Assembly: GCA_002269645.1 (NCBI GenBank)
Contig: NIVC01004691.1
Location: 1 to 37,932 of the forward strand
From: Macrostomum lignano
Lineage: Eukaryota
DNA: 37,932 nucleotides
Reading direction: 5' to 3'
The notes under the pieces were generated by a model. It was not told the origin of the DNA and did no database searches. It saw only the letters and a program-made list of their open reading frames with translations. Of this stretch, positions 1,469 to 37,905 are shown one piece after another. The position numbers and the translations under genes were made by a program. Within the stretch, counting starts at the first letter, position 1. Each line of letters begins with the position of its first letter.

Positions 1469-4400
1469 ATGCGGCTGAATCTGCAGATAGTGATGGGCAG
1501 AAGCCTGGCGACTCTTCTGCTGCTGTCTGCCACACTTCAAATGTGAGTCATGCGACGCTCAATTTCTTACACCAGCTGGGATTCCTGTTGCGGAATCCGG
1601 TTTTTGCTTGGGGTGAATCATACAGATTGGGTCATCATACTGATTGGGTCATCATACTGATTGGTCATCATACTGATTGGGTCATCATACTGATTGGGTC
1701 ATCATACTGATTGGGTCATCATACTGATTGGGTCATCATACTGATTGGGTCATCATACTGATTGGGTCATCATACTGATTGGGTCATCATACTGATTGGG
1801 TCATCATACTGATTGGGTCATCATACTGATTGGGTCATCATACTGATTGGGTCATCATACTGATTGGGTCATCATACTGATTGGGTCATCATACTGATTG
1901 GGTCATCATACTGATTGGGTCATCATACTGATTGGGTCATCATACTGATTGGGTCATCATACTGATTGGGTCATCATACTGATTGGGTCATCATACTGAT
2001 TGGGTCATCATAATGATTGGGTCATCATACTGATTGGGTCATCATACTGATTGGGTCATCATACTGATTGGGTCATCATACTGATTGGGTCATCATACTG
2101 ATTGGGTCATCATACTGATTGGGTCATCATACTGATTGGGTCATCATACTGATTGGGTCATCATACTGATTGGGTCATCATACTGATTGGGTCATCATAC
2201 TGATTGGGTCATCATACTGATTGGGTCATCATACTGATTGGGTCATCATACTGATTGGGTCATCATACTGATTGGGTCATCATACTGATTGGGTCATCAT
2301 ACTGATTGGGTCATCATACTGATTGGGTCATCATACTGATTGGGTCATCATACTGATTGGGTCATCATACTGATTGCTAAGGGTAAAAGCAAAAAAAACA
2401 ATTTTACTAAAGTTTCGATGTCATTTCTTTCATTTCTAAAATCTCTTAGCTACTCACCACAATGCCACAAAACTAAGTATTTAATATTTTGCGTTTATCT
2501 AACCTAAGATCATAAATAGGGTGCGTCTGCATTAACTTTCAACACTAAATTTACCACACCAAATCTACTGTCCCGCCCATTCTTCTTCAGAGCTCTGGCA
2601 GGCAACCAGTACTGCTATCCGCGTGGCAACACCAATGAGTTCCAGCTCAGCCTTGAGTTCACTGAAGATCGAATCATTCCTAAAACTGACGCGGACCCTG
2701 TGCCTGAGGAAGGGCTCAACTGCAAATGGAAGATTCTGACCGACCATCTTGGCAATGCCGTTGTGGTTCTGACTGGCTTTGACACGGAGGCTCACGTTAA
2801 ACAGCAGAGGTGGACACGATCTGTGGATTCAGCAGAACAGCATCAACTGATGCGATACGAACTGCACTCGAAGGCTTCGGACTGTAAGCAGAGCGCTCTG
2901 AGCACAGTTAAATATGTAGTTAAATTATTGATTTTCAACTTCCAGTTCTAACCATATCTGTGAACGAGCAGTTAGTGGTTTTTGTCCCATGCTGCTGACT
3001 GCTAGCTTGTGCTCTATAAAACCAGCCAAATGCATTCATTCTTACCCTGCCAACACAAATCCCAATGCATATACAGCGACTTGCTCGTCGCCTTCAACAA
3101 GCGAGCCAAAGCCAGTGGAGCTGGAGATGCTGCGCGTGCTGCAACTGACGAAAGGGTACGATAGAGCTGGTCCGTTTCTGAAAACAATTTTATTAAATCA
3201 ATTTCTTACTCGAAACTAATCAGTGCACTCTACATAAAACTGCAGGAGCTACCTGACGGTCTCATTCTGGCTGAATCGGAGAAGCTCAGCGAATATCCCG
3301 GGTCTACAAATTCGCCTGATGGAGCCGGGATTCTGCGGCAGAAGCATGACTAATTTTGAGAGCAACTGCTACACCACTGGATCGGTTCGTCGGAACCTGA
3401 CTGCTGAGCTGGCTGCGATGAGCGCTGACAGCGGAGTCATGAGGCTCGCCAGCTTCAACAGCTCCGCGGCTCTGCAGAACTTCGTCAAAGAGAGTAAGCT
3501 GGAGTGAGCCGGTGGCTTTTTAAACACTTAGCGGAACGAAAAAAAATGTACGAATTACAAGTAAATAAAGACTATACATCTTAAAACAGGGATGAGTACT
3601 GCTATGTTAGTGAATTTCCCTCAATATATTATGTCAGGAATGGATTAGGGATAAAAACAAAGCCATCCCTGCAATAGCACAATAAATGACACTATAAAAA
3701 GTTTATTTAAATTGCAATCAAATTAAGTAAAATACTTTATTCCTTTGCTATTGAATTTAATGGCCCCTGAGTATGAGTGCGAATGAGCCTTTCCCTGAGA
3801 AATTCCCTGAGGTATTCCGACGGTTAATGTCCGTGCTTACAGCTTGCATTGAATCAACTTGAAGTCTATCACCAAATTTTAGAGTACGGAAAAATTTCTG
3901 GTCAAGAAAGCTGGTAAATTCATGTCTTGTACCCGTCATATCAATACCAAACCAATATTAAAAGCTAATCACAACGTAACAGCGCAGGTAAGAAAGAATG
4001 CATGTGTAGCCTAAAGTTTTGCCTTGACAAGTGCATGGCATAAAGTGCTGCTGTGTATCCATCAGATTTGAACAATTGCTCAAAAATGCTCATTTTCGCC
4101 ACTGAAAAAAACTTTGTCACCAGATTACCAATCATAATCAAGACAATGATTAAGAGGTTTAATCACACTCTGTAGGTAATTTAAGCCGAATTAATTGGCG
4201 AATTTTCAAATTAATAATAATAATTAATGCAAATTAAAAACTGCATTTCCAAATACGCTCTTATTTCAATAAAGTTTTCAAGTTAAAAACCGTCGTTTTA
4301 TTTGCTGTTGCATCTCATACCCCAAGCTCCTAAGGCCTAAGTTACATAATTTTTGCAATATGCATGCTTCAAACAGCATCAATAATATGGCCCATGATAC

Positions 4401-5462
4401 CAGATAGCGCCATAATCAGAAACATAAAGTTGTCCTGCACTTACTTTTATATCGATAGTTTTCATATTATTATCGAATAATATTCACAAGTTTCAGGCCC
4501 ACAAAGCCGTTATGTCAAACCGCCGCAAAACCCACAATAGGAGCAGTAACGCACGAGAGATGTACCGGTAAATTCCACGCCTGCAGTAACTTAGAAATGG
4601 CTTTCGTTGCCAGCTTATTGAACGCATGCAGTGTCCTTTACTGAACATCGCTGTTTACCTTGGGTTGTAGACCGCACACCTTAACTTTTGCACAATTTCA
4701 CTCCCCTTGAACACCGGCTTCAGGCCAGCGAACTCGCGTCGGCTCCGGCCTGAGCACCCGCATCAAGGAGCCGCTGAATCTCGCACAGAGGCTTCGCATC
4801 GGACTGTTCTATGAGCACAGGACCAAGAAAGTCTTCTACCTGAACTGCGGGGCAGAAGGCTGCAAAATGGCTGAGTTCGAGGATGCTGATAAGCTGTGAG
4901 TTTCTTAACTTGAGAATTGCAGTTTATCTGCTGTCAGAACAATTGGCTCGCTAATTAAATCAAATTTCACAACTCTTTACACTTTAATTCCAGAAACCAT
5001 ACCGTCCAGAGTACGAACTCCTCAGTCTACTGTGGTTCACTCAGAGCTGTCAATCTTACCATTGATGGTGAGGTACTCGGGCTGGTGAGCTTTACGGACT
5101 GCAGTGAGCAGCTGCCGGCTCTGATCAGCTTCCCGGATGCGGCCAGAAACAGATGCGGAGACTCGAGCCAACCTGTGCTCAACTGGATGCTTGCGGCTGC
5201 CCAGCCGGCTGCGGAAGAAGAGCAAACAAGTCCCAGTCCTGAACGGATGAGGCTGATTATGGTTCAATTTGTGGCTGCTGGTTTGATTCTATTGTTATTT
5301 CTCTCTACTTTAACGCTAATTTTTATGAAACAACTGCAATGCCTTCAACGTGAAGCAGCAGCTTCGCCAAAGACGGTCCCAAGCCCCGTTGAAAAAGGAG
5401 GAGGGCCTGAGGGGGCCTGCCAATCCGACGCCCAAAAACCTCTGGTTCATTCTGCGCCTTAG
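1469..5462 (+). CDS. Copy 1: intact spliced gene for a 444-aa type I membrane protein (signal peptide, CUB-like domain, C-type lectin-like domain, stalk, TM, ~45-aa tail)
   Basis: Exons 1469-1542, 2591-2883, 3077-3155, 3246-3493, 4724-4895 and 4994-5462 all have GT-AG borders and compatible phases (2,1,2,1,2), totalling 1335 nt = 444 aa + stop. Signal peptide: MRLNLQIVMGRSLATLLLLSATLQIALA. CUB-like motifs: GLNCKWKI, VVLTGFDTE and GSYLTVSF..GLQIRL. CTLD motifs: C..TNFESNCY, RLASFNSSAALQNFV, LRIGL and C..FTDC. TM: LIMVQFVAAGLILLLFLSTLTLIFM. Exon borders are conserved in the paralogs. Confidence 0.85.
1625..2376. repeat. 17-bp minisatellite (GATTGGGTCATCATACT) x ~44 in intron 1 of copy 1
   Basis: Directly visible, near-perfect tandem array. 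Confidence 0.97.
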
Positions 5463-6907
5463 ACGTCGCAGCTGAATGCTAAAATGTGGATGGAGTTACG
5501 CAACACCCATCACCTTTCCCTGGTAGCCTGACAAAGGCTACAGCACGCACATAAAACAGCTTGAAAGCCTACCAGCTCTCATTTAGTCACGCTAATCATC
5601 TCGTTTTGATCAGCCAATATCCGCGCTTGCAAAAGAGACCAAGTTATTCATAGTCTGTTTACCCGAAATCCAGTTTCACTTCCTCATCGGATGCATCCGG
5701 TAAATGACTGGTTTGAAGATTCAACAGACAATATTTTATGATTTTGTTGCTGGTGTTAAATAAGTGTTAGCAGCTTTACTAAGAATGAACTACGAGGATT
5801 GAGTGAGAAGTTCGCTAGCTGTTATATGCGAGTGATCACTGTATACTTATGCTGTCACTATTATGCAACAATTTTTCTGCTTTATAAATGCGGTAATCGC
5901 TGTAAATATTATAAATATTTCATTTACTTAGAATTCATTTACTGCTTTACCTTATCCATCCACACATCTTTTGATGTTTTCACTGCACTAACGCGAAAGA
6001 TGTGTGGAATAAGGATTGTTGCTTAGTTTGTTGCTGAATTAAACAGTGGTGAAAAAACGAGCGCATGGACAATTTTGGCCATTGTTTAACATTTTACCTA
6101 CTAACCTAGCCATTCTTTCTGTGACAGATCTGCGAAGTTTACGTTTGTTACGAAAGTGTAAATTTACGAGCGTATATTGATGCACATAGCAATAAAATTT
6201 ATTAAAAATGTTGATTAACCTGTCACTTGAAGAATCCAGCAGACATGAAGTTATTTAAGAACTATGCAAGTTGATAACTAAGTGAATGATGATTAAGGTA
6301 GTCAGAGAGATACTTTCAAGAATAATCTAGAAAGTAGGCAATCGAAAAACTTCCTTAAATTAATGCCTAAATTAAATAAAAATAAATACAACAAAAATGA
6401 GGAAGAAGAATAATTATGGAACTTAATAATGATGCAGCTGTAAGATTGTAAAAATTCTGTAGTGAAAAGTTGATTATTTGCATAAATATAGGCATATTTG
6501 CATAAACCTTTAAGATGTGACGCAGTTGTTAAAGCATCTCAAATTAAGGCTGTAGCTGCTGCATTGATTTTACGAATTCGGAATGTCATAACCAACCGAC
6601 TGAAATTACCATGTCATAATTGTAATATTGTATACTTATGTACTGTACATGTCCTGAAGGCAGCATCAAGCTGGCAAGAAAAGCTGCGAGTATTAATTTA
6701 TGTTTTTAAGGAATAGAAAACCAAAGGCTTTTACCTGCACGACGGGCATTTTCGAGAGTGCGACAAATTCCGTCTGAGTGACTCCCCACGACCGGAGCCA
6801 AATTATTAGTGTTCTCCTGCTTGGAAAATGCATATAAAGTTTGAAAAATCTTGCTGGGCAATCCAGGCAATCCAGGCTAGGTGCGAACCCGCGATACATA
6901 CATGAGG

Positions 6908-7095
6908 CTGGCGAAATCTGAGAAATGTGAAAGACAAGGAATGGGAAATCTGGGGAATGTGAACTCTCGGGGAATGTAAAATCAGAAGAAAGTGAATCTT
7001 GAGAGTGGGATTGGGATTGGGAATTTTGGGATTGAAAAATGTAAGGAACATAATCTTGTTAATGTAGAATCTGAAGAAACTGGAAGGCTTGTGAA
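6908..7095. repeat. Degenerate ~16-bp array (GGGAATGTGAAATCTG-like) at a unit junction
   Basis: Repeated GGGAATGT(G/A)AAATCT variants immediately before the junction motif at 7101. Confidence 0.7.
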
Positions 7096-9261
7096 TGTGC
7101 CCCAAAGTTTTAGCTAAATTTTCCACCAAAGATACAAAGACATTGTAATGTCTATCTCATATATAAATTTTCTTTACATTTCATTTATAATATTTAGAAT
7201 TCATTTACTGCTTTGTTACTTTCATTTACGTCGTTGGTACATAGAGACGGCTGTCTGAGCTTCTGCGGGGCACAGTGTTGCCCGATCAGAATTTCATACT
7301 GTCTTCCAGGCCCAGTAGCAAGTACTTTTGACCATTATTCCACAGTTTCTCTTAATTGTGCATTCACCCTATGTGCAAATTCCATCCCGGAGTGAGTGTT
7401 TTGTCACGTGGGTTATTTTATCTACCCGTCACTATCTTTGCACTACCGTGAAATAAGTGTGGGATAGTGGTAGACTGCTTTACACGAGTGTACAAGCATC
7501 CTGAAAACACCTGCAAAAAATGAAGTAATTCAGGAATTAAACAATCAGATGACTACGTGATCGATAGCTAAGGTAAGCAGAGAGTTGAACGTTAATAATC
7601 TAGAAAGTATGCAATAGGAAAACTACATTTATATTTTAAGAGACCGATGATATAAGGTAATCAAAGAGAAATAGTTGCGTTCCCGAAGCCAGCCAGATTT
7701 CATGTCTCATTTTACATCTAGCTGTAAGATTGAAAAGCTGATGGAAATGATCGACTGGTTTTTTGCATAAATATAAGCTCCGTCATATTTAAGAAAAACC
7801 TGGTCTACTTTAGTTGTGGCACAGTTCTTGAAGCATCTCAAATGAAGGCAGTGGTTACTAAATTCAATTTATTAATTCGGAATTGTCTAACTATTGTTTA
7901 GTGCTTGCATTCTTCTAAGGTACGAGTAGCCTACCGGCGCAACGCTTTTGACGACATCGTCCCACAACGAGCGGTAACGTTTTACCATTTTAACCTTTTT
8001 AACATTTAGACGATAGAGTATTAAATATAGCTGTACGAGCTAGTTCATGTTCACGCTTCAATTCTTTGTACAAGTGTCTTGAAGTTGTCTCTCTACCCAG
8101 TGCGAGTCAAAATCCGACGTACGATTAGCAATATTAGCAAAATTAGCAATATTTTATCGTTCAGTCTTGGAATTACCACACCTGGTATGGAGTTTATCAT
8201 AACAGGGTTTGCAGCTGAGGCTTTTATTGGGGGCTGCGTCTTGGCAAGTGGCGCCATAGCAAGAGGCGCCAGCGCCATGGAGACGCGCCAGCACAAAGTG
8301 GCGCCAAGGGGCTGCTGATGAGGCCAAAGTAGCCAAAGTGGCTGTTGGAGAACTGCTAGAATTGAGATCAGAGGCGTCAAACCTGCTTTGAAGGGGCGCC
8401 AAGTCAGCGGGAAATCAGCCATTATTTTTGACAGCCTTTTTGGAGGGCCGGGTCTTCTTGGCCCCCTCCCTAGCCACGGCCTGATCATTTAACCCTCAGA
8501 TTAGTAAGAGACAATTAACTAAGTACCTCGTTTCAAAACTTGTTTGCGATATCATTTTCAGGTTTGTTAATTTTTAATAATTGTAAGCACTGGAAAAGCG
8601 AGCACTGGAGAAGCGCTTAGGTTTCCGCAAGCCAGCCAGCAGCTTGCGAACGTGTGATACAGAAAACTTGCAGGAAAATGCGTTGGGTTTGGGGGTTGAC
8701 CGTTTCCTAACGACGGCACAGAGAGAAACTGCGTGAGCGCTAAACCTACCCCGCTAAAACTATACATTTTTTGCATTATACATGTACTCGTACATGAACC
8801 TATGCGTTCTTGTTGACTAGATCAAATACACTGCCTTAAAAATATTCGGTACTGCAAATTCTGAGATGTGAGCCTCGCACTCATAATAGGGCCTTTACAG
8901 GCCAGTGTGTTTGAAAGTCTTTCTGCCATGCAAGCAGAAGATACGAGAAAAAAAACTTGTTAATGAGAGTAATGACTTTTAGAAATAAAGGAGCGTTCAG
9001 CACAGAACAGAGAATTCCCTTGTACTTGCACATGCAGATGGCTCTCTTCAGATGTGTTGCTAAAAATAGCTTCTGGGTGCGGGCGGCGTCCAGCTCGCAC
9101 AAGCAGGCAGGCCACGTATCGCGGGTTTGCGCCTTGTCTCCAGCCTGCTGGCTGACGCTGGCGCCCTGAATTCGGTCGGCGACGTGGCCTTCCTTTGCGA
9201 CTTGTACCGCTAATGTCAAAGGACTGTCAGCGTATCTTGCTGTTTTCCTTGCGACGCCGAG

Positions 9262-9490
9262 GAAATCTGGGAATTTATAATTTGGAATTGTGAAATCTGG
9301 GAAATGTAAAATCTGGGGAATGTGAAATCTTAGGAACGTGAAACATGGAGGAAAGCAAAACCTGGGGAATGTGAAATCTGAGAAATTTAAAATCTGGGGG
9401 GGTATAAACTCTGAGGGAATGTAAAATCTGGGGGAATGTGAAATCTGGGAGATATGAAATCTGGGGAATGTAGAATCGAGAAAATGTAAA
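9262..9490. repeat. Degenerate ~16-bp array at the A/B junction
   Basis: Repeated GGGAATGTGAAATCTG variants. Confidence 0.85.
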
Positions 9491-10369
9491 ACCTACCCTA
9501 AAGTTCTAGCTAAAGTTCTCCACTAAAAAGACCAAATGAGAGCGACGAAACTTATATTCAAGCTGTTTCTGCCCCACAGTACTTTTAGCTCGCACAGCTC
9601 GCAGTTGTTGAACTAAACTAAAAGAAGAATTCATAAATATTCTGAAAACCGTTGTGAATCCGGACAGAGTCCATAAAGACAATTTTAGTCTCTTAACTTT
9701 GACGACAATGACATCCGCCAGACCCAATGTCACATGCTTGTAATCATTCCCTGCAGTTGACTGCTTTGCCTTTGGGCTTTGAACTTTGAACAATAAATAA
9801 AGAACTCTAAAGTTCACAGAAAAACTAAAGTTCCCTTTTTGTACAGCGTTAGGCGGCGTACAGAGAACAGTGCATGCTTGGTCTGAAAGCGCATGCACAG
9901 TACAGATCAAGCGTGCGTCCTCTGCTTCTCTTTCCTCGCATGCTACGTACAATGGTGATGTAAAGGGCGGCAACAACGCACGCATACACCCACACTCCAA
10001 CTCTATTTAAACAATTCTACTGACTGAATTTCCATGGAAGAGCCATGGAATTGCCTTTTAGTTGTACTTGAAAAAAGGGCAAACTCCAACTGCTTAAGAG
10101 AAAATTTGCCGCGGAAAAGCCGTGGGTTTTACTTGGATTTTACTTGGATCTGCCACAGGGTTTCCTCAGCTTCGCCTGTAAAATCATGGCTTTTCTACTT
10201 CGTAAGATTTCTCATAAAGTCTACAAGAAGTTGTAAATTGGCCAACATCTCTTGGTGAGTATGTGTCCACATGGACAGTGAGTGAGCACATTTGGTTACC
10301 ATAGTTTTCAAGAAATTTGAGCATAATTTGATGGCCATGTTAAAGAGTCCTTTTTTGTTAAGTTAGAAT

Positions 10370-10549
10370 CAGTAGCGGATTTAGAGGGGATTTACAGGGC
10401 GCGCGGCCCTCCCGTCGAGTTTGATTTTTTATTTTTTTATATGAAAAGTACACATTTTCAGGTAGCTACATATACGTGTAAATGATATGCACAAACATGC
10501 ACCTTAGTAGTCTGCGCCCCCCGTACAAAAATTTCTGGATCCGCAACTG
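10370..10549. mobile_element. 180-bp MITE with CAG-ended TIRs (hAT-like)
   Basis: TIRs CAGTAGCGGATTTAG and CTGGATCCGCAACTG (12/15 match). No clean TSD. Absent from the other units. Confidence 0.65.
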
Positions 10550-11453
10550 AGCTAGATAAGATAGCTACAGTATGAGTAAAGAATGTCAAAAGTTTTTCTA
10601 AGCTCCTAGATTTTATATTTTACGTAATTAAACTAACAGTTTTTTGTTCGCGAGGCCTTGCATATTGGGCTATATACAGTACATGCTCGTACATATATCG
10701 TATTGCTGAATTCGATGGATGCGCGGATGGATTTTCACTGTAATATATGATATATCATGCTCATTCATGTAACTACTCGGGTCATTAGAGTATAGCAAGC
10801 ATTCAAGTATAATTATGGTCGAGTGAACCATGATTACTTGCTAGCTGCTACTCGTACATTTCATTTTAAGTCAAATAAATATATTAAAATCCCTGTTTGG
10901 AATTTTCGTGGAAAACCTGGTAGCGGTATCTGCGCTTAACTTAGAAAACTTATATGAGCTAGGTTTTTGCGCAATAAATACATTTATAAGTTGGTTTTAT
11001 TTTTTTAAATTTACTCGTTATCGTAAAAAATTTTTTTTGTTTTTTAATTTAAAAACAATCGATGGAGTTCGTCGTACAGCAATGTGACGAACTACGAGCG
11101 TCAGACCGATGTCAGCAAACCATTATTGCGTTGCGGCAGCATCTTCGATGATACATGCAATATAATCGAACAAACACATTTGGAAATCAGATGACGTTTC
11201 AAAATAGATTTTTTATATACTCGTAATTATACATGCATACTGTTATATTGTTCTGTTGCACGAAAGAAAACCTCAAGAGAACGAGCCTAGGGCTGTTTAC
11301 GCGGGTTTGTGCCAGACGTGCACTGTAAGGGGGGGGTGCTTTCACAAGGTCGAAATTTCACAACGTCGAAATTTCACAACGTCGAAAAGTAAATTATCTC
11401 ACTATAGGTCGAAACTTTACAGGGTTGAAATTTTAGAACATTGAAAGCTTAAG

Positions 11454-11766
11454 CAGTGGTAGCGCAGTATCTCTGGTTGGGGGGGGGGCAGTAGTTAGGT
11501 GGTCACCCCTTTACAATTAAACCCTTACCCTTACAAGGCGGTCACACTTCTTACAAAACGAATTTACAACACGAAAATTCTTATAAAAATGCATTTTTAA
11601 TCATTGATGCAAGTTGCATTACAGGGGTGACCATCTCCCTCCATTCCTAGGGTCTTTTCTAGGGCCGTGGGGATGGTGGGGTCGTCACCCCCCCCCTTGA
11701 GACAGTGACCTGTGGTCACCCGGGGGCAGTTGCCCCCCCTGCCCCCTCCCCCCTGCGCCGTAACTG
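11454..11766. mobile_element. G/C-run-rich MITE-like element with degenerate CAG-ended TIRs, nested in a GTCGAAATTTCACAAC-repeat element
   Basis: TIRs CAGTGGTAGCGCAG and CTGCGCCGTAACTG (10/14 match); flanks agree at only 5/8. Related GTCGAAA repeats occur at 11340-11440 and 11780-11815. Confidence 0.5.
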
Positions 11767-12352: not shown

Positions 12353-12358
12353 TATAAA
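12353..12358 (+). promoter_or_regulatory. TATA box of copy 2
   Basis: TATAAA 84 nt upstream of the ATG, retained at the same spacing although the surrounding sequence is diverged. A CCGGAAGT (ETS-like) motif lies just before the ATG. Confidence 0.5.
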
Positions 12359-12436
12359 TCCTGATGCAGAAAGAAACAGAGTCTACATACTGCATCTAAC
12401 CCTAATCGGGATTTTTAGATGCCGGAAGTGAGCGAC

Positions 12437-21302: not shown

Positions 21303-21308
21303 TATAAA
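21303..21308 (+). promoter_or_regulatory. TATA box of copy 3
   Basis: TATAAA 82 nt upstream of the ATG. Copy 1 has CATAAA at 1385-1390 at equivalent spacing. Confidence 0.5.
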
Positions 21309-28819: not shown

Positions 28820-28943
28820 AGGGAAATCAAAGAAATGTAGAATTTGGGAACGTAATATTTGGGGAATGTAAAATGTAAGAAATGTAAAATTCAGGGATGT
28901 GAAATCTGGAAAATATGAAATATGGGGTAATTTGAAACATACC
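28820..28943. repeat. Degenerate ~16-bp array at the C/D junction
   Basis: Same motif, ending GAAACATACCC. Confidence 0.75.
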
Positions 28944-29743
28944 CAGTGCCCGAAAATTCTAGCTTAAGATGTCCGCCTAAGGTACAAAATGAGAGCAGCG
29001 AAATTAATGCTGTTTGTGCACCACACGTACAGTACCTTGAGCTCGCAGTTGTGAAACTAAACTAAAAGAAAGATTACAAAAATAAACTTTTAATCCCTTA
29101 GTTTAGACGAGAGGGACATCCGCCGGACTCAGACGTAATTTCACATGCTTATAATCTTATTCCTTGCAGTTGAGTGCTTTGAGCCGTGAGATGAGTCTAT
29201 TAACTACGAACTTTTTGTGGGAACTGTACCATATATTGCGTATTCATTTATTTCGCAACCTTTCAAAATAACAACAAAAAAATCTAAAGTAACTTGGAAC
29301 AAAACTGAAGTTCCTTTTTTGTACAGCACTTGACTTTGGGGGGGGGGAGGCGTACAGCGAACAGTGCATGCTGCTTTGGAAACTGCTTTGGTACAAGAAG
29401 CGTGCGTCCTTCTGCTTCTCTTTCCTCGCATAGTACTCGGCGGCATAGATCCGCATTCCTGTATTGTATCGGCTAAATTTCCATGGAAAAGCCATGGAAT
29501 GGCCTTTTAAAAGTACTTGGAGACTTATTCACAGAAGAAAAATCCGCGGAAAAGCCGTGGGTTTCACTTGGACTTGCCACAGAGTTACCGCAGCTTCACC
29601 TGTAATTAAAATCATGCGTTTGCCACGGTTGCTACCCCCCATCAAAATTTGCAAATATTGCAAGAAGCAGAGAAACTTCTTTTGGTTAGTACACAGAGAC
29701 AATGAGTTAAGTTTCGTGCACATTTAGTTGAGTCTGTGGCAGT

Positions 29744-30675
29744 TGACTGCCACAATTTGACTGCCACAATTTGACTGCCACAATTTGACTGCCACAATTT
29801 GACTGCCACAATTTGACTGCCACAATTTGACTGCCACAATTTGACTGCCACAATTTGACTGCCACAATTTGACTGCCACAATTTGACTGCCACAATTTGA
29901 CTGCCACAATTTGACTGCCACAATTTGACTGCCACAATTTGACTGCCACAATTTGACTGCCACAATTTGACTGCCACAATTTGACTGCCACAATTTGACT
30001 GCCACAATTTGACTGCCACAATTTGACTGCCACAATTTGACTGCCACAATTTGACTGCCACAATTTGACTGCCACAATTTGACTGCCACAATTTGACTGC
30101 CACAATTTGACTGCCACAATTTGACTGCCACAATTTGACTGCCATAATTTGACTGCCACAATTTGACTGCCACAATTTGACTGCCACAATTTGACTGCCA
30201 CAATTTGACTGCCACAATTTGACTGCCACAATTTGACTGCCACAATTTGACTGCCACAATTTGACTGCCACAATTTGACTGCCACAATTTGACTGCCACA
30301 ATTTGACTGCCACAATTTGACTGCCACAATTTGACTGCCACAATTTGACTGCCACAATTTGACTGCCACAATTTGACTGCCACAATTTGACTGCCACAAT
30401 TTGACTGCCACAATTTGACTGCCACAATTTGACTGCCACAATTTGACTGCCACAATTTGACTGCCACAATTTGACTGCCACAATTTGACTGCCACAATTT
30501 GACTGCCACAATTTGACTGCCACAATTTGACTGCCACAATTTGACTGCCACAATTTGACTGCCACAATTTGACTGCCACAATTTGACTGCCACAATTTGA
30601 CTGCCACAATTTGACTGCCACAATTTGACTGCCACAAGTTGACTGCCACAATTTGACTGCCACAATTTGACTGCC
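29744..30675. repeat. 14-bp minisatellite (GACTGCCACAATTT) x ~66
   Basis: Directly visible, with only isolated substitutions. It explains the three long repetitive minus-strand ORFs. Confidence 0.97.
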
Positions 30676-30697
30676 AAAAGTACCAAACGTACCATAG

Positions 30698-30896
30698 AAA
30701 CCATACTGCTTTGAGTACAAACTCCTCAGTCTTCTGTGACTCACTCAGAACTGTCAATCTTATCATTGATGATAAGAGCCAACAAGAGATGATAATTAAG
30801 AGAGAAAACTCGAGCCAACCTGTGCTCAGCTGGATGCTTGCGGCTGCCCAGCCAACTGCAGAATACGAGCTAAGAACAAGCAAGTCGCAGTCCTAA
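30698..30896 (+). pseudogene. Copy 4 remnant: internally deleted exon 6 only, lacking the TM
   Basis: The sequence NHTALSTNSSVFCDSLRTVNLIID...NSSQPVLSWMLAAAQP matches exon 6 and is followed by 3' flank homology. Exons 1-5 and the promoter are absent; a 14-bp minisatellite sits in their place. Confidence 0.8.
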
Positions 30897-33004
30897 AAGA
30901 ATGAGTCTGATTTTGGTTCGCCAGTCAACTCTAGCTCGTATTTGATCAGCCAATAGCCGCGCTTGCAAAAGAGACCAAACTATCCATAATTATGGAGTCT
31001 GATTACTCGAAATCCAGCTTCACTTCCTCATCGGCTTCATCGAGTAGATGTCAGGTTTGAAGATTTTGTGTTTTAGTTGTTGGTGTTAACTAAGCTTTAC
31101 TAATCGTAAGAATAATAGTTCACAGCCTCAAAGCTCTTCATTGAAACTATAAGAGGATTGAATGAGAAATATGCTGTTACATGCGAGTGATGACTGTATA
31201 ATTATGCTGTTACTGTTCTGCTGTTTAAATGCTGTAAATCTCTGCAAATATCGGAAATATTTATCTAGAATCTAGAAAGAAGGCAATCGAAAATGTAATC
31301 ACTGGATTAAACATTTGTAAGAGGAAATAAAACAATAACGAGGAAGAAAATATAATTAAGTAACGATAAAAAATCCGAGAACTTAATTAACAGTAGAACT
31401 ACCCAGAGGGGGCATCCCCCTGACAATTTTTTGCTGCGCCGTACTGGAGCAACGCAGACATACGAAATTCAAGAACACAGGCAAAAATTTTGTTGCGCAC
31501 CTTCTCAAACAAGAATCAAGTCGCCAGCCCTCCGGACCGTCGAGATATTTGACGATTCTGCCAGAAGGTCTGATTTTTCCCATAAGCGCCAGTGTATTCA
31601 GTACACCCCTGTGCGCCAATCAACACTGCGCCTCAGTGCAGCCTTGCCAAGCCTCCAAATTTCATCAGCACGTCGACCACATGTGTCCGCATCAGCTCTT
31701 ACTTCGTTGGTCACTAGCCTTCACCCAGGCGGAGCTTCTGGACCTTCCACAGGTGGCACCAGGTGACTATAGACACGCTGTTGCAAATTTATCTAGTTTC
31801 GATGATCAAGCGAGATCCAGTAGGCAAGCTGCTGGACATCCTCAGCTGGTATCTCAAGCATTCCGTTATCACCCCGGTACTTTTGAGCCAATGAGAGTCA
31901 GCACCAAGGGGCGCCAGCACCAAGGGCTGTTGTTGGGGCCAAAGTAGCCAAAGTGGTGGTCGGGGGAACTGCTAGAATTGGGAAAAGAAGCGCCAAACCT
32001 GCTGAAGAGGCGCCAAGTCAGTAGGTACTCAGCCATTAGCTTTGCCAGCCTATTTGGAGGGCCGGATCGCCCTTTGGCCCTTCCGTGGCCACGCTCCTGA
32101 TCTTTTTAATCAAAGAAGAGATTAGTAAGAAAGTGGAAAGAGATTAGAAAGAAAGAAAATAAAAAGTAAGATAACATTCAGTAAGTATCTAAGTTACAAA
32201 ACTTGTTCGTGTTATCATTTGCAGTTTCTTTCATTCTTTTAATACCTGTCTGTAAGCACCGGAAAAGCGCTTGCATCGAAGTGGAAAAAACAACAACCTC
32301 TACTCATCTTGACCAAACCTATCCAAACAGACCAGCTTAAGAAGCCGATCTCAATGCCCAAATGACAATAACGAATCTGAGATTTGAGGGCCAAGCCAGT
32401 AGCCTGCGAACGCGTGACACAGAAGACTCGCAGCAAAATGTGTTGAGAGGCGGGGGTTGATAATTGCCATAAAAACAGCACAGAGAGAAACTGCGTGAGC
32501 GCTAAGCCTACCCCGCTCAAAATATTCATTACTTCTGCATTGTGCGTATGCGTTTTAGTTGACTATAAGATACACTGCTTTGAATAATGTTCAGTACTGC
32601 GAATTCTGAGCTGTGAGCCTCACACTCATAATAGGGCCTTTAGAGGCCAGTGTGTTTGAAGTCTTTCTGCCATGCAAGCAGAAGATAATAGGGAAAAACC
32701 TGTTAATAACGTTTAAAAATCCAGGAGCGTTCCGCACAGACCAGAGAATCTCCTTGTACTTGCACATGCAGATGGCTCTCTATAGATGTGTTGCTAAAAA
32801 TAGCTTTGAGTTTGGCCTGCGTACATGGAGTGAGGGCGGCGTCCAGCTGGCACAAGCAGGCAGGCCATGTATCGCGGGTTCGCGCCTTGTCTCCTGCCTG
32901 CTGTCTGACGCCGGCGCCCCGGATTCAGTCGGCGACGTGGCTTTTCTTTGCGACCTGACCCAGAGGCGCGCCCTGTGCCGCTGTATTGTTGTTTATTGCG
33001 ACGC

Positions 33005-33368
33005 CGGAGAAATATGGGGAATGTAAAATTTTTGGAACGTAAAATCTTGGGAATGTGAAATATGGTGAGCGTGAAATGCAAGGAATGTTAAATCTGGGAA
33101 ATGTGAAATCTGTTGATGCAAAATCTGGGGAATGGGAATTCTGGTGAATGTGAATTTCGGGGAATGTGAACTCTGGGGAATGTGAAATCTGGGGAATGTG
33201 AAATCTGCAGAATGTGAAATCTGCGGAATGTGAAATCTGCGGAATTTTAAATCTGGGAATGTGACATCTGCGGAATTTTAAATCTGAGGGAATGTCAAAT
33301 CTGAGAAATTTTTAAAATCTGGAATGTGAAATCTGGGAGATGTAAATCTGAGGAATGTGAAACATACC
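33005..33368. repeat. Degenerate ~16-bp array at the D/E junction
   Basis: Same motif, ending GTGAAACATACCC. Confidence 0.85.
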
Positions 33369-34501
33369 CTAAAGTTCTAGCTAAAGTTTTCCACCAGAAA
33401 AGACAAAATGAGAGCGACGAAACTTATATTCAAGCTGTTTCTGCACCATAGCACTTTTAGCTCGCACTGCTCGCAGTTGTTGAACTGAACTAAAAGAAGA
33501 ATTCATAAACACATTCTGAAGACCCTTGTGAACCACTAAAGAAAATTTTAGTCTCAACTTTGACGACAATGACATCCGCCAGACCCTACGTATGTCAAAT
33601 GCTTGTAATCATTCCCTGCCGTTGACTGCTTTGCCTTTGGGCTTTGAGCTTTGAACAATAAATAAAGAACTCTAAAGTTCACAGAAAAAACTGAAGTTCC
33701 CTTTTTTGTACGAACGTAGAGCGTTAGGCGGCGTACAGAGAACAGTTCATGCTTGGTCTGAAAGCGCATGAACGATACAGATCTCTTCTGTCTCTCTTTC
33801 CTGGCATGCTACGTACTCGTACAATAGGGCGGCAACTGTGCATACACTCACACTCCAACCCTATTTAAATAATTCTACTGACTGAATTTCCATGGGAGAG
33901 CCATGGAATTGCCTTTTAGTTGTACTTGAAAGGAGGGGCAAATTCCAACTGCTTTAAGAGAAACATTCGCCGCGGAAAAGCCGTGGGTTTTACTTGGATT
34001 TTACTTGGATCTGCCACAGAGTTACCGCGGCTTCGCCTGTAAAATCATGGGTTTTCCGTGGTGCTCCCTTCCTAAATTTTATTGTATAAAGTCTGCAGGA
34101 AGTTGGAGTTGGCCAAAATCTCTTGGTGAGTGAGTCCACATGGACAGTGAGTTGAGTTTCGTGCACACTTAGTTACCATAGTTTTTAAGTGTCCCCTTTT
34201 GTCAAATGATATTTAATTGAGGAAAGATAGAAGGAAGCAAAATAGTAGTTAAGAATGTTAAACAAAATATTTTTTGTTCCCACGGAATTTTCCACTGTCG
34301 TTCGATTAGGGGCTGTGTATTGTGTATTGTACTTCGATTGCTAAATGATTTTCGAATTCAACGTACGCGATGATTTCTTTGTAATACGAGTGTACATGCA
34401 GTACACGTACATACGAGCGTACATAGCTACCGGGGTTCATTAGAGTCACTAGAGTATAAGTATGTTCAGGTAAGTAAGAGCAAAGGCTGAGTCTGTCTCA
34501 C

Positions 34502-34699
34502 CACTGGCGTATTCAGGGGGGGGGCGGCCTGGCCTGGGGTGGTGGGGTTGGGCGCGGCCGGTACCAAAAACCATGAGACAATTGAGTGCCTGCGGCTCTA
34601 AAATGAGTGCCTGCGGCGCCAAAAGTGGCACTGCAGGCATGAGACTTGGCCAGCCAGGTCAACCCGGCCCCTAAATTGAAATTCCTGGCTACGCCACTG
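34502..34699. mobile_element. 198-bp hAT-like MITE with 8-bp target site duplication
   Basis: TIRs CACTGGCGTATTCAGG and CCTGGCTACGCCACTG (13/16 match). TGTCTCAC is duplicated at 34494-34501 and 34700-34707. The empty site TGTCTCACCAGATG is present in unit C (~21050). Confidence 0.9.
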
Positions 34700-34943
34700 T
34701 GTCTCACCAGATGCTTCATTACATATAAAATCAAAGAAAGAATTAAATCTACACGATTTTACAGCTATAATTCCTTGACAGCAGGGTTAGGTAAACTACG
34801 AGCTAAAAGCCAAGAAATGTGTCACTACATCCGGGTACTAAAACAGAAATCAGATTGCTAAAATTAGAAATTTCGTATAGTACGCGTACAAGAAGTTTGA
34901 TGCAATTTACGAATATCTTTGTTCAGCAGTTTCACGTCTTACC

Positions 34944-34949
34944 TATAAA
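34944..34949 (+). promoter_or_regulatory. TATA box of copy 5
   Basis: TATAAA 80 nt upstream of the ATG. Confidence 0.5.
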
Positions 34950-35023
34950 TGCTGGCGCAGACACAGAATCTCCATGCTGCGCCCACCTCTCATCGCGAAT
35001 TTTAGGTGCCGGAAGTGAGCGAC

Positions 35024-37905
35024 ATGCGACTGAATTTGCAGATTGTGATAGGCAGAAGCCTGTCGACTCTTCTGCTGCTGTCTGCCACATTTCAAATGTG
35101 AGTGATGCGATGCTCAAGTTCTTGCACCAACTGGGATTTTTGTAGCGGATTTCAGGTTTTGATTGGGGTGGTTTAGATGCTTTTGGATGCCACACTTTGG
35201 GTGCGTCATATTGATTTCGGCGTCACTGATTTGGTCATCATACTGATTGGGTCATCATACTGATTGGGTCATCATACTGATTGGGTCATCATACTGATTG
35301 GGTCATCATACTGATTGGGTCATCATACTGATTGGGTCATCATACTGATTGGGTCATCATACTGATTGGGTCATCATACTGATTGGGTCATCATACTGAT
35401 TGGGTCATCATACTGATTGGGCCATCATACTGATTGGGGTGTCATGCTGATTGGGGTGTCACACTGATTGATTGGGGTGTCATGCTGATTGGGGTGTCAC
35501 ACTGATTGATTGGGGTGTCATACTGATTGGGATGTCATACTGATTGATTGGGGTGTCATACTGATTGATTGGGGTGTCACACTGATTGATTGGGGTGTCA
35601 TACTGATTGATTGGGGTGTCATACTGATTTGGATGTCATACTGATTGATTGGGATGTCATACTGATTGATTGGGTGTCATACTGATTGATTGGGGTGTCA
35701 CACTGATTGATTGGGGTGTCATACTGATTGAGGTGTGATACTGATTGGGGTGTCATACTGATTAATTAGGGTGTCATACTGATTAATTTGGGTGTCATAC
35801 TGATTAATTTGGGTGTCATACTGATTAATTGGGGTGTCATACTGATTAATTGGGGTGTCATACTGATTAATTGGAGTGTCATACTGATTGGGGTGTCATA
35901 CTGATTGGAGTGTCATACTGATTGGGGTGTCATACAGATTGGAATGTCATACTGATTGATTGGGGTGTCACTGATTGATTGGGGTGTCACTGATTGAGGT
36001 GTCATACAGATTGGAATGTCATACTGATTGATTGGGGCGTCATACTGATTGGGGTGGCGATGTACTTTGTTGGGCTGTCTTTTTGGGGGCTTCCCATTAT
36101 GGGACTGTTATTTGGGGGCCTGTCCTTGCGAGGCTGACGCGGTCAGTGTACATTGATGTACGAAATTTAATTGGAATTTTGCCACAAAATCGATGGCATT
36201 TCTTCACGTTCATGCGTATTGCTATTGATAATAATATATTACTATGTATTCTGTATATTTTTAAAATATAACACAAATTAATTAACAGGTCGGTATGCGA
36301 GAAATAAACTGAAGTACCGACCGAAAAGTCAATTAATCGCATAATCAACAACCCATTTTGCCAATAATAGCTCAGAAAATAACGTTTAAGAGATAAAATT
36401 TTAAGTGAGCTGAGCCTTCCAACAACTTTTCACTGTCCATTTACAAAAAATCCTACTCCTCCTCATTCTTCTTATCCACAGAGCTCTGGCAGGCAACCAG
36501 TTCTGCTATCCGCGTGGCAACACCAATGAGTTCCAGCTCAGCAAAAAAATCGAGTTCATTGAAGATCGAATCATTCCCAAAACTGATGGAGACCCTGTAC
36601 CTGAGGAAGGCCTCAGCTGCAAATGGAAGATTCTGACTGACCATCTTGACAATGCCGTTGTGGTTCTGACTGGCTTTGACACGGAGACGCACTTAAGCGA
36701 GCGGAGGTGGAAAAGATCTGTGGATTCAGCTGCACAGCAACAACCGATGCGATACGAACTGCATTCAAAGGCTTCGAACTGTAAGCAGCGCTTTGAGCAC
36801 AGTTAGTGAATAAATAATAATATTCGATTTTGTCTAGTTACTCTTTTGCTAGAAACAGAACATCTAAAAGCTGTTCAATAACGTTCATTCAGTTAATTAC
36901 CAACAAAAGGCTCAATACAGATAATAAAGCATCTAATTAGCCGTCTGGTAGCCAAACGAAGAGAATTAATAACTCTCTTAGAGTTATAAAGAGTTATATA
37001 GTTTGAGGAAGTTAAAATCAAATAGTAGAGATGATAAGATTGAACTTCACGCCTACTTATAAATGCTTTGTGCAGTAGTGAAGTCTGCACTTGTTGAATG
37101 GCAAGTGTGAGCGAGAATTTTGTTTTAATGCCCCACTACTGACTTCTAGTCGGTACTAGATAAACGCAGTCAACTCCCAATGGAACTTGAACTTTTCAGC
37201 GACTTGCTCGTCGCCTTCAACAAGCGAGCCAAAGCCGTGGAGCTGGAGATGTTGCGCGTGCTGCAACTGACGAAAGGGTACGATAGAGCTGGCCTGATGC
37301 TGGACCGATTCTTTGAAATCCATAATTCTGTAATTGAACTCAACCACTGTACTCTACATCAAACTGTAGGAGCTACCTGACGGTCTCATTCCGGCTTAAT
37401 CGGAGTAGCTCAGCGAATATCCCTGGTCTACAAATTCGCCTGATGGAGCCGGGATTCTGCTGCAGAAACATTACAAATTTTGAGAGCAACTGCTACACCA
37501 CAGGATCGGTTCATCGGAACCTGACTGCTGAGCTGGCTGCGATGAGCGCTGACAGCGGAGTCATGAGGCTCGCCAGCTTCAGCAGCTCCGCGGCTCTGCA
37601 GAACTTCGTCACAGAGAGTAAGCTGGAGTTAAGAGGTGGCTTTTGCACATATTTGCACAAATGCACATGGGTTTGGGATAGGAAGCACATTTTAAATGTT
37701 ACACAATTTCACTCCACTTAAACGCCGGCTTCAGGCCAGCGAACTCGCGTCGGTTCCGGCCTGAACACTCGCAGCAAGGAGCCGCTGAATCTTGCACATG
37801 GCTTCGCATTGGACTGTTCTATGAGCACAGGACCAAGAAGGTCTTCTACCTGAACTGCGGGGCAGAAGACTGCAAAATGGCTGAGTTCGAGGATGCTGAT
37901 AAGCT
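35024..37905 (+). pseudogene. Copy 5 of the CUB-CTLD-TM gene, exons 1-5 (runs off the window), with two frameshifts
   Basis: Exons 35024-35097, 36482-36780, 37200-37277 (78 nt vs 79), 37370-37617 and 37735-37905 (171 nt vs 172; CAGAGG to CATGG near 37799). Intron 4 is only 117 nt versus 1230-1388 nt in copies 1-3. Confidence 0.75.
35228..36052. repeat. 17/21-bp minisatellite in intron 1 of copy 5
   Basis: About 12 GATTGGGTCATCATACT units, followed by degenerate GATTGGGGTGTCATACT and GATTGATTGGGGTGTCATACT variants. Confidence 0.93.

What the first reader, a model, noticed from the sequence alone, without database searches (positions are those of the whole stretch)
1469..37905. Hidden tandem family of CUB-CTLD single-pass receptors undergoing birth and death
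Seen: five paralogous loci plus one gene-less unit, recoverable only by splicing six exons. One locus is intact, three are frameshifted and one is a remnant. Established: CUB domains and CTLDs are extracellular recognition modules, and tandem clusters with pseudogenes, mosaic copies and variable ectodomains are typical of immune, allorecognition and gamete-recognition genes. Inference: this is a lineage-specific, rapidly diversifying cell-surface recognition cluster. I do not recognise it as a named gene.
Basis: partly seen in the sequence, partly recalled or inferred. Interest (0 to 1): 0.85.

Follow-up and report, generated by a model that had tools for sequence, protein, structure and literature searches.

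The report
Flatworm tandem CUB-like/CTLD-like membrane gene family
This contig of the flatworm Macrostomum lignano carries a tandem array of already-annotated but uncharacterised single-pass membrane protein genes with very divergent CUB-like and C-type-lectin-like modules; the array is real, but the "pseudogenes" are probably sequencing errors and there is no sign of rapid ectodomain diversification.

Summary
The window is the whole contig NIVC01004691.1 of the M. lignano Mlig_3_7 assembly. All five junctions match RNA-seq-based GenBank models of paralogues. There are five loci in five ~10-kb units (A intact; B, C, E each broken by 1-nt deletions; D an exon-6 remnant); I found no sixth, gene-less unit. 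All four frameshifts are homopolymer contractions relative to near-identical, intact counterpart loci on other contigs of the same PacBio-CLR assembly, so they are more likely consensus errors than pseudogenes. Genuine decay does exist (remnant D on four contigs, a TAA nonsense copy elsewhere), and so does mosaicism (A is C-like 5', B-like 3'). Fold claims are only moderately supported: no Pfam hit in any of 25 members, but Foldseek matches CUB domains (TM ~0.5-0.57) and family profiles hit almost only CTLDs in PDB (E >= 0.004). The ectodomain is conserved (dN/dS ~0.4); variation lies in one loop and the TM/tail. The family was found only in M. lignano. It is an ordinary lineage-specific expansion, already in databases as "hypothetical protein".

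The parts
1469..5462 (+). Locus A: intact six-exon gene, 444 aa (exons 1469-1542, 2591-2883, 3077-3155, 3246-3493, 4724-4895, 4994-5462). Signal peptide aa 1-~28, CUB-like module ~29-173, CTLD-like module ~174-345, stalk, TM 376-399, tail of ~45 aa.
   Evidence: ORF, GT-AG. (junctions match annotated paralogues). (GenBank BOX15_Mlig023137g3 = 1469-3507, exons 1-4 plus read-through). (single hydropathy peak, 381-399). (five N-x-S/T sequons, all in module 2).
12437..16097 (+). Locus B: six exons (12437-12510, 13168-13463, 13655-13733, 13815-14061, 15317-15488, 15587-16097). One 1-nt deletion (AAA->AA) at ~14056 in exon 4 shifts the frame. The 3' end is extended (…HSGYSTHIKQLESRPALI*) because an ~80-nt deletion removed the A-type stop.
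21385..25643 (+). Locus C: six exons (21385-21458, 22110-22407, 23070-23148, 23242-23489, 24878-25052, 25151-25643). One 1-nt deletion at ~22223 in exon 2 (TT->T relative to the counterpart on NIVC01000712.1). The rest of the gene is open, with a type-2 stalk/TM/tail.
   Evidence: (counterpart L2_a is an intact 455-aa ORF). (introns 0.10% different). (GenBank 130-aa model at 23120-23512).
30698..30920 (+). Locus D: exon-6-only remnant with an internal deletion, no exons 1-5 and no TM. It directly follows a 14-mer minisatellite.
   Evidence: (99-100% identical copies on three other contigs, so this is an old, genuine gene fragment).
35024..37905 (+). Locus E: exons 1-5 (35024-35097, 36482-36780, 37200-37277, 37370-37617, 37735-37905); exon 6 lies beyond the contig end. 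Two 1-nt deletions: ~37237 (CCC->CC, exon 3) and ~37799 (TT->T, exon 5).
   Evidence: (counterpart = P0006/BOX15_Mlig008400g2, intact 454 aa). (1 substitution in 870 exon bases; introns 2-4 identical).
1..37932 (+). Five tandem repeat units (about 1-9470, 9471-19787, 19788-28940, 28940-33342, 33343-end), each with a 'head' upstream of exon 1 and a 'tail' carrying degenerate 16-mer arrays.
1617..2376 (.). 17-bp minisatellite (~45 copies, ~99% identical) inside intron 1 of locus A. A homologous 17/21-bp array lies in intron 1 of locus E (35197-36056). It is absent from introns 1 of B and C.
   Evidence: intron-1 lengths differ between homeologues.
29589..30681 (.). 14-bp minisatellite (~78 copies) occupying the place of exons 1-5 in unit IV, abutting remnant D.

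Best explanation
The window is one of about three homeologous or redundant copies of a Macrostomum lignano gene cluster. The cluster encodes a lineage-restricted family of type I membrane glycoproteins. Each protein has a signal peptide, a highly divergent CUB-like beta-sandwich, a highly divergent C-type-lectin-like domain lacking the Ca2+/sugar motifs (so probably a protein-binding rather than a sugar-binding module), a stalk, one TM helix and a short variable tail. SHOWN: the six-exon structure, the junctions, five loci in tandem, mosaicism between neighbours, one old remnant, and purifying selection on the ectodomain. INFERRED: (1) the proteins act as cell-surface receptors or adhesion molecules whose conserved ectodomain binds a common ligand, while the exchangeable stalk/TM/tail cassettes vary coupling or trafficking; (2) the array evolves by unequal crossing-over and gene conversion; (3) the four 1-nt frameshifts in B, C and E are most likely uncorrected PacBio homopolymer errors in a small multi-copy contig, so these loci are probably functional genes.
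For: Source and annotation: (contig NIVC01004691.1; BOX15_Mlig023137g3). Gene model. All five junctions are identical in nine annotated paralogues, whose models are RNA-seq-derived (PMC5730564). Topology: one hydropathy peak at 381-399, an A-x-A signal-peptide end, and five sequons only in the ectodomain. CUB-like module: invariant C33...C69-x-W71 across 12 divergent members, and Foldseek top hits to neuropilin, Neto2, C1r/C1s, MASP-1, PCPE-1 and Kremen CUB domains, TMt 0.5-0.57, E 1e-4 to 4e-3. CTLD-like module: 20/20 and 23/24 PDB profile hits are CTLDs aligned at the canonical C..W..F...CY..S....T..A......LA..S start, best E 0.004; the predicted order b-b-a-a-b...b-b-b fits; Cys pairs C179/C190 and C302/C325 sit at the C0-C0' and C2-C3 positions. 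Selection: ectodomain pN/pS 0.44, TM/tail ~1. Mosaic. Frameshifts as likely errors: all four are homopolymer contractions in the window relative to intact counterparts. C vs L2_a introns differ by 0.10% and E vs L1_a introns 2-4 are identical, while the exons carry 3 one-nt deletions against 6 substitutions. 4 of 13 differences are 1-nt indels (P=0.034 at a 10% expectation) and in 4/4 the window is the shorter. The assembly is PacBio CLR + Canu + Pilon with 180 Mb of >=95% redundant blocks.
Against: No Pfam CUB or Lectin_C hit in any of 25 members even at E<=10. The module-1 profile has no PDB sequence hit. The AF2 model is only moderate (pLDDT 62; the second half of the CTLD-like module is 45-60) and CUB superpositions are loose (rmsd 6-8 A). 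The C. perfringens enterotoxin C-domain scores as well as CUB. Foldseek lists never showed a CTLD hit for module 2, because the listed top 50 were all beta-sandwich matches. The second CUB disulfide and the CTLD C1-C4 disulfide are missing in this subfamily. Without reads, real homeologue-specific frameshifts in a neopolyploid (PMC10733133) cannot be excluded. There are no expression or functional data.
Confidence: 0.68

Rival explanations
1. One reading: a rapidly diversifying immune, allorecognition or gamete-recognition receptor cluster undergoing birth-and-death, with three true pseudogenes and variable ectodomains.
For: Tandem array, mosaic copies and remnant D. A TAC->TAA nonsense copy and partial copies exist on other contigs. 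pN/pS is ~1.2 in loop aa 81-110. The C. elegans CTLD+CUB clec genes are pathogen-responsive (PMC8051790).
Against: Ectodomain pN/pS is 0.39-0.44 and module 2 is almost invariant among 10 paralogues. The only region of the ectodomain at or above 1 is a loop with pLDDT below 50, which is more simply explained by relaxed constraint. The most variable part is the TM/tail, not the recognition surface. The frameshifts look like consensus errors. No expression evidence points to any tissue.
Confidence: 0.12
2. The frameshifts are real: B, C and E on this contig are young homeologue-specific pseudogenes, decaying because the neopolyploid genome carries redundant intact copies on the other subgenomes.
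For: M. lignano has three subgenomes (S, L1, L2) with redundant gene copies (PMC10733133). Intact counterparts exist. GenBank's pipeline called only a 130-aa ORF at locus C and nothing at B or E. The assembly was Pilon-polished with DNA and RNA reads, which should remove many errors.
Against: All four lesions are 1-nt homopolymer deletions, with the window always the shorter copy. The loci are ~99.9% identical to their counterparts, so four frameshifts would have had to arise almost without accompanying substitutions. Polishing is unreliable in >=95% identical multi-copy regions.
Confidence: 0.3
3. The two ectodomain modules are not homologous to CUB and CTLD at all, but are novel or convergent folds. 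The weak matches would then reflect generic beta-sandwich geometry and a short Cys-rich motif.
For: No Pfam hits. There is no PDB sequence hit for module 1. Enterotoxin C-domain hits tie with CUB. CTLD profile hits cover only the first ~60 residues, with E >= 0.004. UniRef names for relatives are inconsistent: CUB, ZP, Tub, LAM_G, ricin-B, PAZ.
Against: The unanimity of CTLD hits (43 of 44 across two searches) at the correct domain start, the CTLD-like a/b order in the model, Cys spacing matching C0-C0' and C2-C3, the CUB hallmark C...C-x-W, and many independent CUB structures among the top Foldseek hits.
Confidence: 0.15

Closest known systems
Caenorhabditis elegans clec family (CTLD proteins, many combined with CUB, e.g. 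CLEC-4, CLEC-41/42; PMC8051790)
   Same: A large lineage-specific invertebrate expansion of proteins that combine CTLD and CUB modules behind a signal peptide, with members often in genomic clusters and most of unknown ligand.
   Different: The nematode proteins are mostly secreted, are recognisable by SMART/Pfam, and often carry two CTLDs and two CUBs. The flatworm proteins are TM-anchored, have one CUB-like module followed by one CTLD-like module, are too divergent for Pfam, and have no expression or pathogen-response data. No sequence homology between the two families was detected here.
NK-receptor-type CTLDs (CD69, NKG2A/KLRC1) and DC-SIGN/DC-SIGNR/Endo180 CTLDs
   Same: These are the best and almost the only PDB sequence-profile matches. 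They share the long-form N-terminal beta-hairpin Cys pair and the a1 region. Like the CD69 and NKG2 CTLDs, the family has no EPN/QPD or WND Ca2+/sugar motifs.
   Different: Those receptors are type II membrane proteins and have no CUB. Here the protein is type I. The C1-C4 disulfide is absent in this subfamily, 'WIGL' reads 'RIGL', and similarity is detectable only over ~60 residues at E >= 0.004.
CUB domains of neuropilin, Neto2, C1r/C1s, MASP-1, PCPE-1
   Same: Top Foldseek matches (TMt 0.5-0.57). The first CUB disulfide and the C-x-W motif are conserved, and the module sits at the N-terminus of a receptor ectodomain.
   Different: There is no Pfam or sequence-profile match. Only one Cys stands where the second disulfide should be. 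The module is longer (~145 aa) and has a disordered, variable loop (aa ~92-111). The superposition is loose.
Vertebrate attractin (CUB + EGF + kelch + PSI + CTLD single-pass receptor; from my own knowledge, not tested here)
   Same: A type I membrane protein that contains both a CUB domain and a CTLD.
   Different: Attractin is much larger, has a different architecture, and is a conserved single-copy gene. No homology was detected.

Membership tests
CUB domain (Pfam PF00431) | Significant match to the family sequence profile | tested here: not met
   No hit at E<=10 for locus A or for any of 25 family members. The module-1 profile finds nothing in PDB sequences.
CUB domain (Pfam PF00431) | Jelly-roll beta-sandwich fold of ~110 aa superposable on solved CUB domains | tested here: inconclusive
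   In the AF2 model (pLDDT 62 overall), module 1 is mostly 66-88. Foldseek top hits include more than 10 independent CUB structures, TMt 0.5-0.57, E 1e-4 to 4e-3. However, rmsd is 6-8 A and an unrelated enterotoxin beta-sandwich scores equally.
CUB domain (Pfam PF00431) | Four conserved cysteines forming two disulfides (C1-C2, C3-C4) | tested here: not met
   C33 and C69 (with W71) are invariant in 12 divergent members, which fits C1-C2. Only one further Cys (C125) lies in the module, so the second pair is absent.
C-type lectin-like domain (Pfam PF00059) | Significant match to the family sequence profile | tested here: not met
   No Lectin_C hit in any member.
C-type lectin-like domain (Pfam PF00059) | Detectable homology to solved CTLDs | tested here: inconclusive
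   Family profiles hit 20/20 and 23/24 CTLD chains (CD69, DC-SIGN/R, MRC2, NKG2A) at the canonical domain start. Best E is only 0.004 and only ~60 residues are covered.
C-type lectin-like domain (Pfam PF00059) | Conserved cysteine framework (C0-C0', C1-C4, C2-C3) and WIGL motif | tested here: inconclusive
   C179/C190 (C0-C0') and C302/C325 (C2-C3) are present and nearly invariant. C1 is replaced by M/S in this subfamily but is present ('AIC') in the distant paralogues P0012 and P0034, which also carry extra C-terminal Cys. 'WIGL' reads 'RIGL'.
C-type lectin-like domain (Pfam PF00059) | Ca2+-dependent carbohydrate-binding motifs (EPN/QPD and WND), which define true C-type lectins | tested here: not met
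   Direct reading of aa 255-335 of locus A and of alignment A6 shows no EPN/QPD, and 'WND' is 'FTD'. If this is a CTLD, it is the non-lectin kind.
Type I single-pass membrane protein | N-terminal signal peptide, one TM helix, N-out topology | tested here: met
   The sequence MRLNLQIVMGRSLATLLLLSATLQIALA|G is present. There is a single Kyte-Doolittle peak (2.59) at aa 381-399. All five N-x-S/T sequons lie N-terminal to the TM. No dedicated predictor was available.
Birth-and-death tandem multigene family | Tandem paralogues with gene remnants or pseudogenes and recombinant (mosaic) copies | tested here: met
   Five tandem loci. Remnant D is conserved on four contigs. A TAA nonsense copy (L4_b) and partial copies lie on other contigs. 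Nearest neighbours conflict between exons. The three frameshifted loci do not count as secure pseudogenes.
Diversifying recognition receptors (immune, allorecognition or gamete) | Elevated dN/dS or hypervariability on the ligand-binding ectodomain | tested here: not met
   Ectodomain pN/pS is 0.44 (median pairwise 0.39). Module 2 windows are 0.26-0.76. Only the loop aa 81-110 (1.23) and the TM/tail (1.4-1.5) reach or exceed 1.
Diversifying recognition receptors (immune, allorecognition or gamete) | Tissue-specific expression and population polymorphism | not testable with these tools
   The gene IDs are absent from searchable papers and from two supplement sets. No read data were available.

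The most novel reading that the evidence does not exclude
The RNA-seq-derived GenBank models that join exons 1-4 of one copy to exons 5-6 of the next copy downstream (P0001: L2_a + L2_b across 16 kb; P0009 likewise) might be real transcripts rather than mapping artefacts. The array would then work partly like protocadherin or UGT1 clusters. Alternative 5' ectodomain cassettes would be spliced onto different CTLD-C-terminal/stalk/TM/tail cassettes, which together with recombination would explain why tails vary while the ectodomain stays conserved. This would be in a Macrostomum-restricted orphan receptor family.
Probability: 0.07. Interest if true: 0.7.

Novelty: new member of a known kind. Interest (0 to 1): 0.3.

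Why it matters
The value is modest. The work defines and correctly models a Macrostomum-restricted family of about 15-25 gene copies. Databases currently list these as 'hypothetical' proteins, with truncated models (locus A, 235 instead of 444 aa), chimeric models (P0001, P0009) or no model at all (B, E). It also shows that the second module is a cryptic CTLD that Pfam misses. The case illustrates a general trap: apparent 'pseudogenes' in multi-copy regions of long-read assemblies of a neopolyploid can be homopolymer errors. If the proteins proved to be receptors with a conserved ligand-binding ectodomain and swappable tails, they could be a tractable target in a transgenic flatworm model. Nothing here yet points to a new principle.

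Tried and rejected
1. Pfam on the spliced 444-aa protein, on distant relatives and on all 25 aligned members gave no CUB or Lectin_C hit.
2. PDB sequence search with the single protein gave only noise, and the module-1 profile gave nothing.
3. The first AlphaFold run, with nine near-identical sequences, had pLDDT 34 and was unusable.
4. Foldseek against the viral library, intended to expose a CTLD match for module 2, returned only beta-sandwich hits.
5. Rfam found no RNA family on the contig.
6. Ten large non-family ORFs in intergenic or intronic DNA have no Pfam domain, so I found no second gene type in the units.
7. Literature and supplement searches for twelve Mlig gene IDs found nothing.
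8. Searches for 'Macrostomum + CUB domain' and 'Macrostomum + C-type lectin' returned only adhesion-protein papers and an unrelated gut gene.
9. I rejected UniRef's 'CUB domain-containing protein' label as evidence, because close relatives are auto-named ZP, Tub, LAM_G, ricin-B, PAZ or kinase.
10. I rejected P0020 (a bacterial SpaA-repeat protein) as a false positive.
11. I considered intron 3 as possibly coding, because it is open in frame in B and C. I rejected this because all nine annotated paralogues splice it out and it is closed in A and E.

Full report
SOURCE. The window is eukaryotic: ~42% GC, with ~10-kb segmental repeats and several minisatellites. A protein search placed it in the free-living flatworm Macrostomum lignano. 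A later search showed that a GenBank protein (P0035, BOX15_Mlig023137g3) lies on a contig of exactly 37,932 bp. Look-ups then confirmed that the window is the whole contig NIVC01004691.1 of assembly Mlig_3_7 (GCA_002269645.1), in + orientation.

OBSERVATION: THE GENE MODEL. The exons are 1469-1542, 2591-2883, 3077-3155, 3246-3493, 4724-4895 and 4994-5462. All introns are GT-AG, and the ORF is 1335 nt, or 444 aa. Nine annotated M. lignano paralogues of 272-485 aa show the same five junctions (...TFQ|IALAG......KASD|ATCSS......LTKG|SYLTV......FVTE|SQRTR......DADKL|NHTV...). The Mlig_3_7 annotation is derived from RNA-seq (StringTie/TACO/TBONE; PMC5730564), so these junctions carry transcript support. 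On this contig GenBank annotates locus A only as a 235-aa product: exons 1-4, then read-through of the exon-4 donor (...KESKLE*). At locus C it annotates a 130-aa single-exon ORF that retains intron 3. The family is therefore not hidden, but locus A is under-annotated, and I saw no model at locus B.

OBSERVATION: THE LOCI. BLAST with locus-A exons and nhmmer with exon profiles built from seven copies find exactly four multi-exon loci. These are A, B (12437-16097), C (21385-25643) and E (35024-37905, truncated by the contig end). There is also one remnant, D (30698-30920), made of two pieces of exon 6 with an internal deletion, and nothing else. Self-alignment gives five units, starting near 1, 9471, 19788, ~28940 and 33343.

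Spliced at the homologous sites, A is intact. B is shifted by a 1-nt deletion in exon 4 (AAA->AA, ~14056). C is shifted by one in exon 2 (~22223). E is shifted by two: exon 3 at ~37237 and exon 5 at ~37799.

ARE THE FRAMESHIFTS REAL? Other contigs of the same assembly carry colinear copies of the cluster. NIVC01000712.1 (L002) matches window 19170-30340 at 98.4%, and NIVC01003947.1 (L001) matches 24674-37932 at 95-98%. This fits the three subgenomes (S, L1, L2) and the assembly redundancy described for this neopolyploid (PMC10733133; 180 Mb of >=95% identical blocks).

At each of the four lesion sites the counterpart has one more base in a homopolymer: TT vs T, AAA vs AA, CCC vs CC, TT vs T. 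The counterpart genes are intact six-exon ORFs. L2_a (455 aa) corresponds to C, L1_a = P0006 (454 aa) to E, and L2_b (460 aa) is the B-like copy.

The window loci are almost identical to their counterparts. For C vs L2_a there are 5 exon substitutions and 3 intron mismatches in 2,890 nt, and introns 3-5 are identical over 1,579 nt. For E vs L1_a there is 1 exon substitution and introns 2-4 are identical over 628 nt. Three frameshifting deletions against six exon substitutions is an implausibly indel-rich spectrum for real mutation. Across the near-identical stretches, 4 of 13 differences are 1-nt indels (P=0.034 at a 10% expectation), and the window is the shorter sequence in all four.

The assembly is PacBio CLR assembled with Canu and polished with Pilon, and short-read polishing is unreliable in multi-copy regions. 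I therefore rate consensus error at roughly 2:1 over genuine young pseudogenes. Without reads the question stays open. Single-base indels are also common in non-coding alignments, so the exons are not visibly protected from them.

GENUINE BIRTH-AND-DEATH SIGNALS. Remnant D is present at 99-100% identity on three other contigs, so it is old and real. One public copy (L4_b) has a TAC->TAA nonsense substitution. Partial copies also exist: on L003, part of exon 4 with exons 5-6; on L002, an exon-6 fragment.

Mosaicism is clear. Exon 1 of A is 97% identical to C but 91% to B. Exon 6 of A is 98% and 95% identical to B (first and second halves) but 83% and 81% to C. L3_a changes partner within exon 6. 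Unequal crossing-over or gene conversion in a tandem array explains this. Cluster order also differs between homeologous contigs.

WHAT THE PROTEIN IS. The sequence shows a signal peptide ending in A-L-A|G and one strong hydrophobic segment at aa 381-399. All five N-glycosylation sequons lie in the ectodomain. The tail is ~45 aa.

Neither Pfam nor PDB sequences recognise the single protein. An exhaustive HMM search of 1.84 billion representatives found 22 proteins. One was a bacterial false positive. Every hit that carries a source name is from M. lignano; the remaining hits were one unnamed Logan fragment and a few I did not look up. The distant paralogues are 20-40% identical and keep the same two-module layout. 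None of them has a Pfam domain.

MODULE 1. Across 12 divergent members only C33, C69 and W71 are invariant. That pattern is the CUB hallmark C...C-x-W. With a 25-sequence alignment AlphaFold gave pLDDT 62 and pTM 0.58, with an all-beta module 1 that is mostly at pLDDT 66-88. Foldseek's best PDB matches are CUB domains of neuropilin-1/2, Neto2, C1r, C1s, MASP-1, PCPE-1 and Kremen (TMt 0.5-0.57, E 1e-4 to 4e-3). They are interleaved with the C. perfringens enterotoxin C-domain. The second CUB disulfide is missing. Verdict: a CUB-like beta-sandwich, moderately supported.

MODULE 2. Family profiles hit almost only CTLDs in the PDB: 20/20 with the full profile and 23/24 with the module-2 profile. 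The hits include CD69, DC-SIGN/R, Endo180 and NKG2A. They align at the canonical CTLD start, with best E of 0.004. The predicted order is two strands, two helices, then a series of strands, and the Cys pairs C179/C190 and C302/C325 fit a long-form CTLD. The a1 cysteine is lost in this subfamily but kept in the distant paralogues P0012 and P0034. There is no EPN/QPD or WND motif, so any CTLD here is of the non-lectin kind. The Foldseek lists never reached module 2. Verdict: a CTLD-like module, moderately supported.

SELECTION. Nei-Gojobori estimates were made over ten genomic copies, with the four deletions padded for the analysis only. Pooled pN/pS is 0.39 for module 1, 0.50 for module 2, 0.44 for the whole ectodomain and 0.92 for the stalk/TM/tail. 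In sliding windows only aa 81-110 (1.23; this window spans the pLDDT<50 loop at aa 97-109) and aa 381-430 (1.4-1.5) exceed 1. Module 2 is nearly invariant among the close paralogues. This is the opposite of the variable ectodomains expected for diversifying recognition genes.

COMPARISON AND NOVELTY. The nearest documented analogue is the C. elegans clec expansion. It has 288 CTLD proteins, about half with extra domains such as CUB, and CLEC-41/42 are secreted and bind bacteria (PMC8051790). The flatworm family differs in being TM-anchored, in its CUB-then-CTLD order, and in being too divergent for Pfam. It is a new member of a known kind: lineage-specific invertebrate CTLD/CUB surface protein arrays. 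It is already deposited, but uncharacterised and partly mis-modelled.

LIKELY MECHANISM (inferred). These are cell-surface receptors or adhesion molecules. Their conserved ectodomain binds a common, probably proteinaceous, ligand. Recombination shuffles the stalk/TM/tail cassettes.

Noticed in passing
L002 10001-29025 (P0001); L004 18130-24315+ (P0009): Two GenBank gene models are chimeric. P0001 joins exons 1-4 of one copy (L2_a) to exons 5-6 of the next full copy 16 kb downstream (L2_b), skipping L2_a's own exons 5-6 and the D-type remnant. P0009 does likewise. This is either a multi-mapping artefact or real inter-copy splicing.
   Followed up: partly
window 3156-3245, 13734-13814, 23149-23241, 37278-37369: Intron 3 (81-93 nt) is open and in frame in loci B and C (ORFs 13693-14115 and 23108-23512) but closed in A and E. 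GenBank's 130-aa model at 23120-23512 retains it. All full-length annotated paralogues splice it out.
   Followed up: partly
window 37618-37734 vs 3494-4723, 14062-15316, 23490-24877: Intron 4 is only 117 nt in locus E (and in L1_a and L4_a) but 1.2-1.4 kb in A, B and C. This is a large intron indel that separates two lineages of copies.
   Followed up: no
window 1617-2376 and 35197-36056: Homologous 17-bp (17/21-bp in E) minisatellites sit in intron 1 of A and E but not of B or C. Array length differs strongly between homeologues (E intron 1 is 1384 nt; its counterpart is 2936 nt).
   Followed up: partly
window 29589-30681: An almost perfect 14-bp minisatellite (~78 copies) ends 17 bp before remnant D and occupies the position where exons 1-5 should be. 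This creates 326-413-aa artefactual ORFs on the minus strand.
   Followed up: no
window 9261-9494, 19413-19754, 27024-27845, 33010-33378: Degenerate 16-bp arrays (consensus about GGGGAATGTGAAATCT) mark the tail of every repeat unit, just upstream of the next unit's head. One of them (27120-27845) has expanded to a near-perfect array.
   Followed up: no
window 22408-23069 (intron 2 of locus C): Intron 2 is 662 nt in C against 193 nt in A and 191 nt in B. The extra ~470 nt holds a 106-aa minus-strand ORF (22562-22882) with no Pfam hit. It may be a small transposable-element insertion.
   Followed up: partly
locus C exon 6 (25151-25643) and paralogues P0004, P0006: Type-2 cytoplasmic tails contain L-Q-Y-R-A-V, which fits the ITIM-like / YxxPhi consensus. 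The A/B-type tail (…CLQREAAAS…) has no tyrosine at all. Tails fall into at least three cassette types.
   Followed up: no
locus A protein aa 125 and 343: The ectodomain has ten cysteines. After the expected CUB and CTLD pairs and a C273/C278 loop are assigned, C125 (module 1) and C343 (end of module 2) are left over. An inter-module disulfide is therefore possible.
   Followed up: no
window 5455-5535 vs 16047: Locus B (like public L2_b/P0001) lacks ~80 nt that in A contain the stop codon. This gives an alternative 16-aa longer C-terminus (…HSGYSTHIKQLES·PALI).
   Followed up: partly
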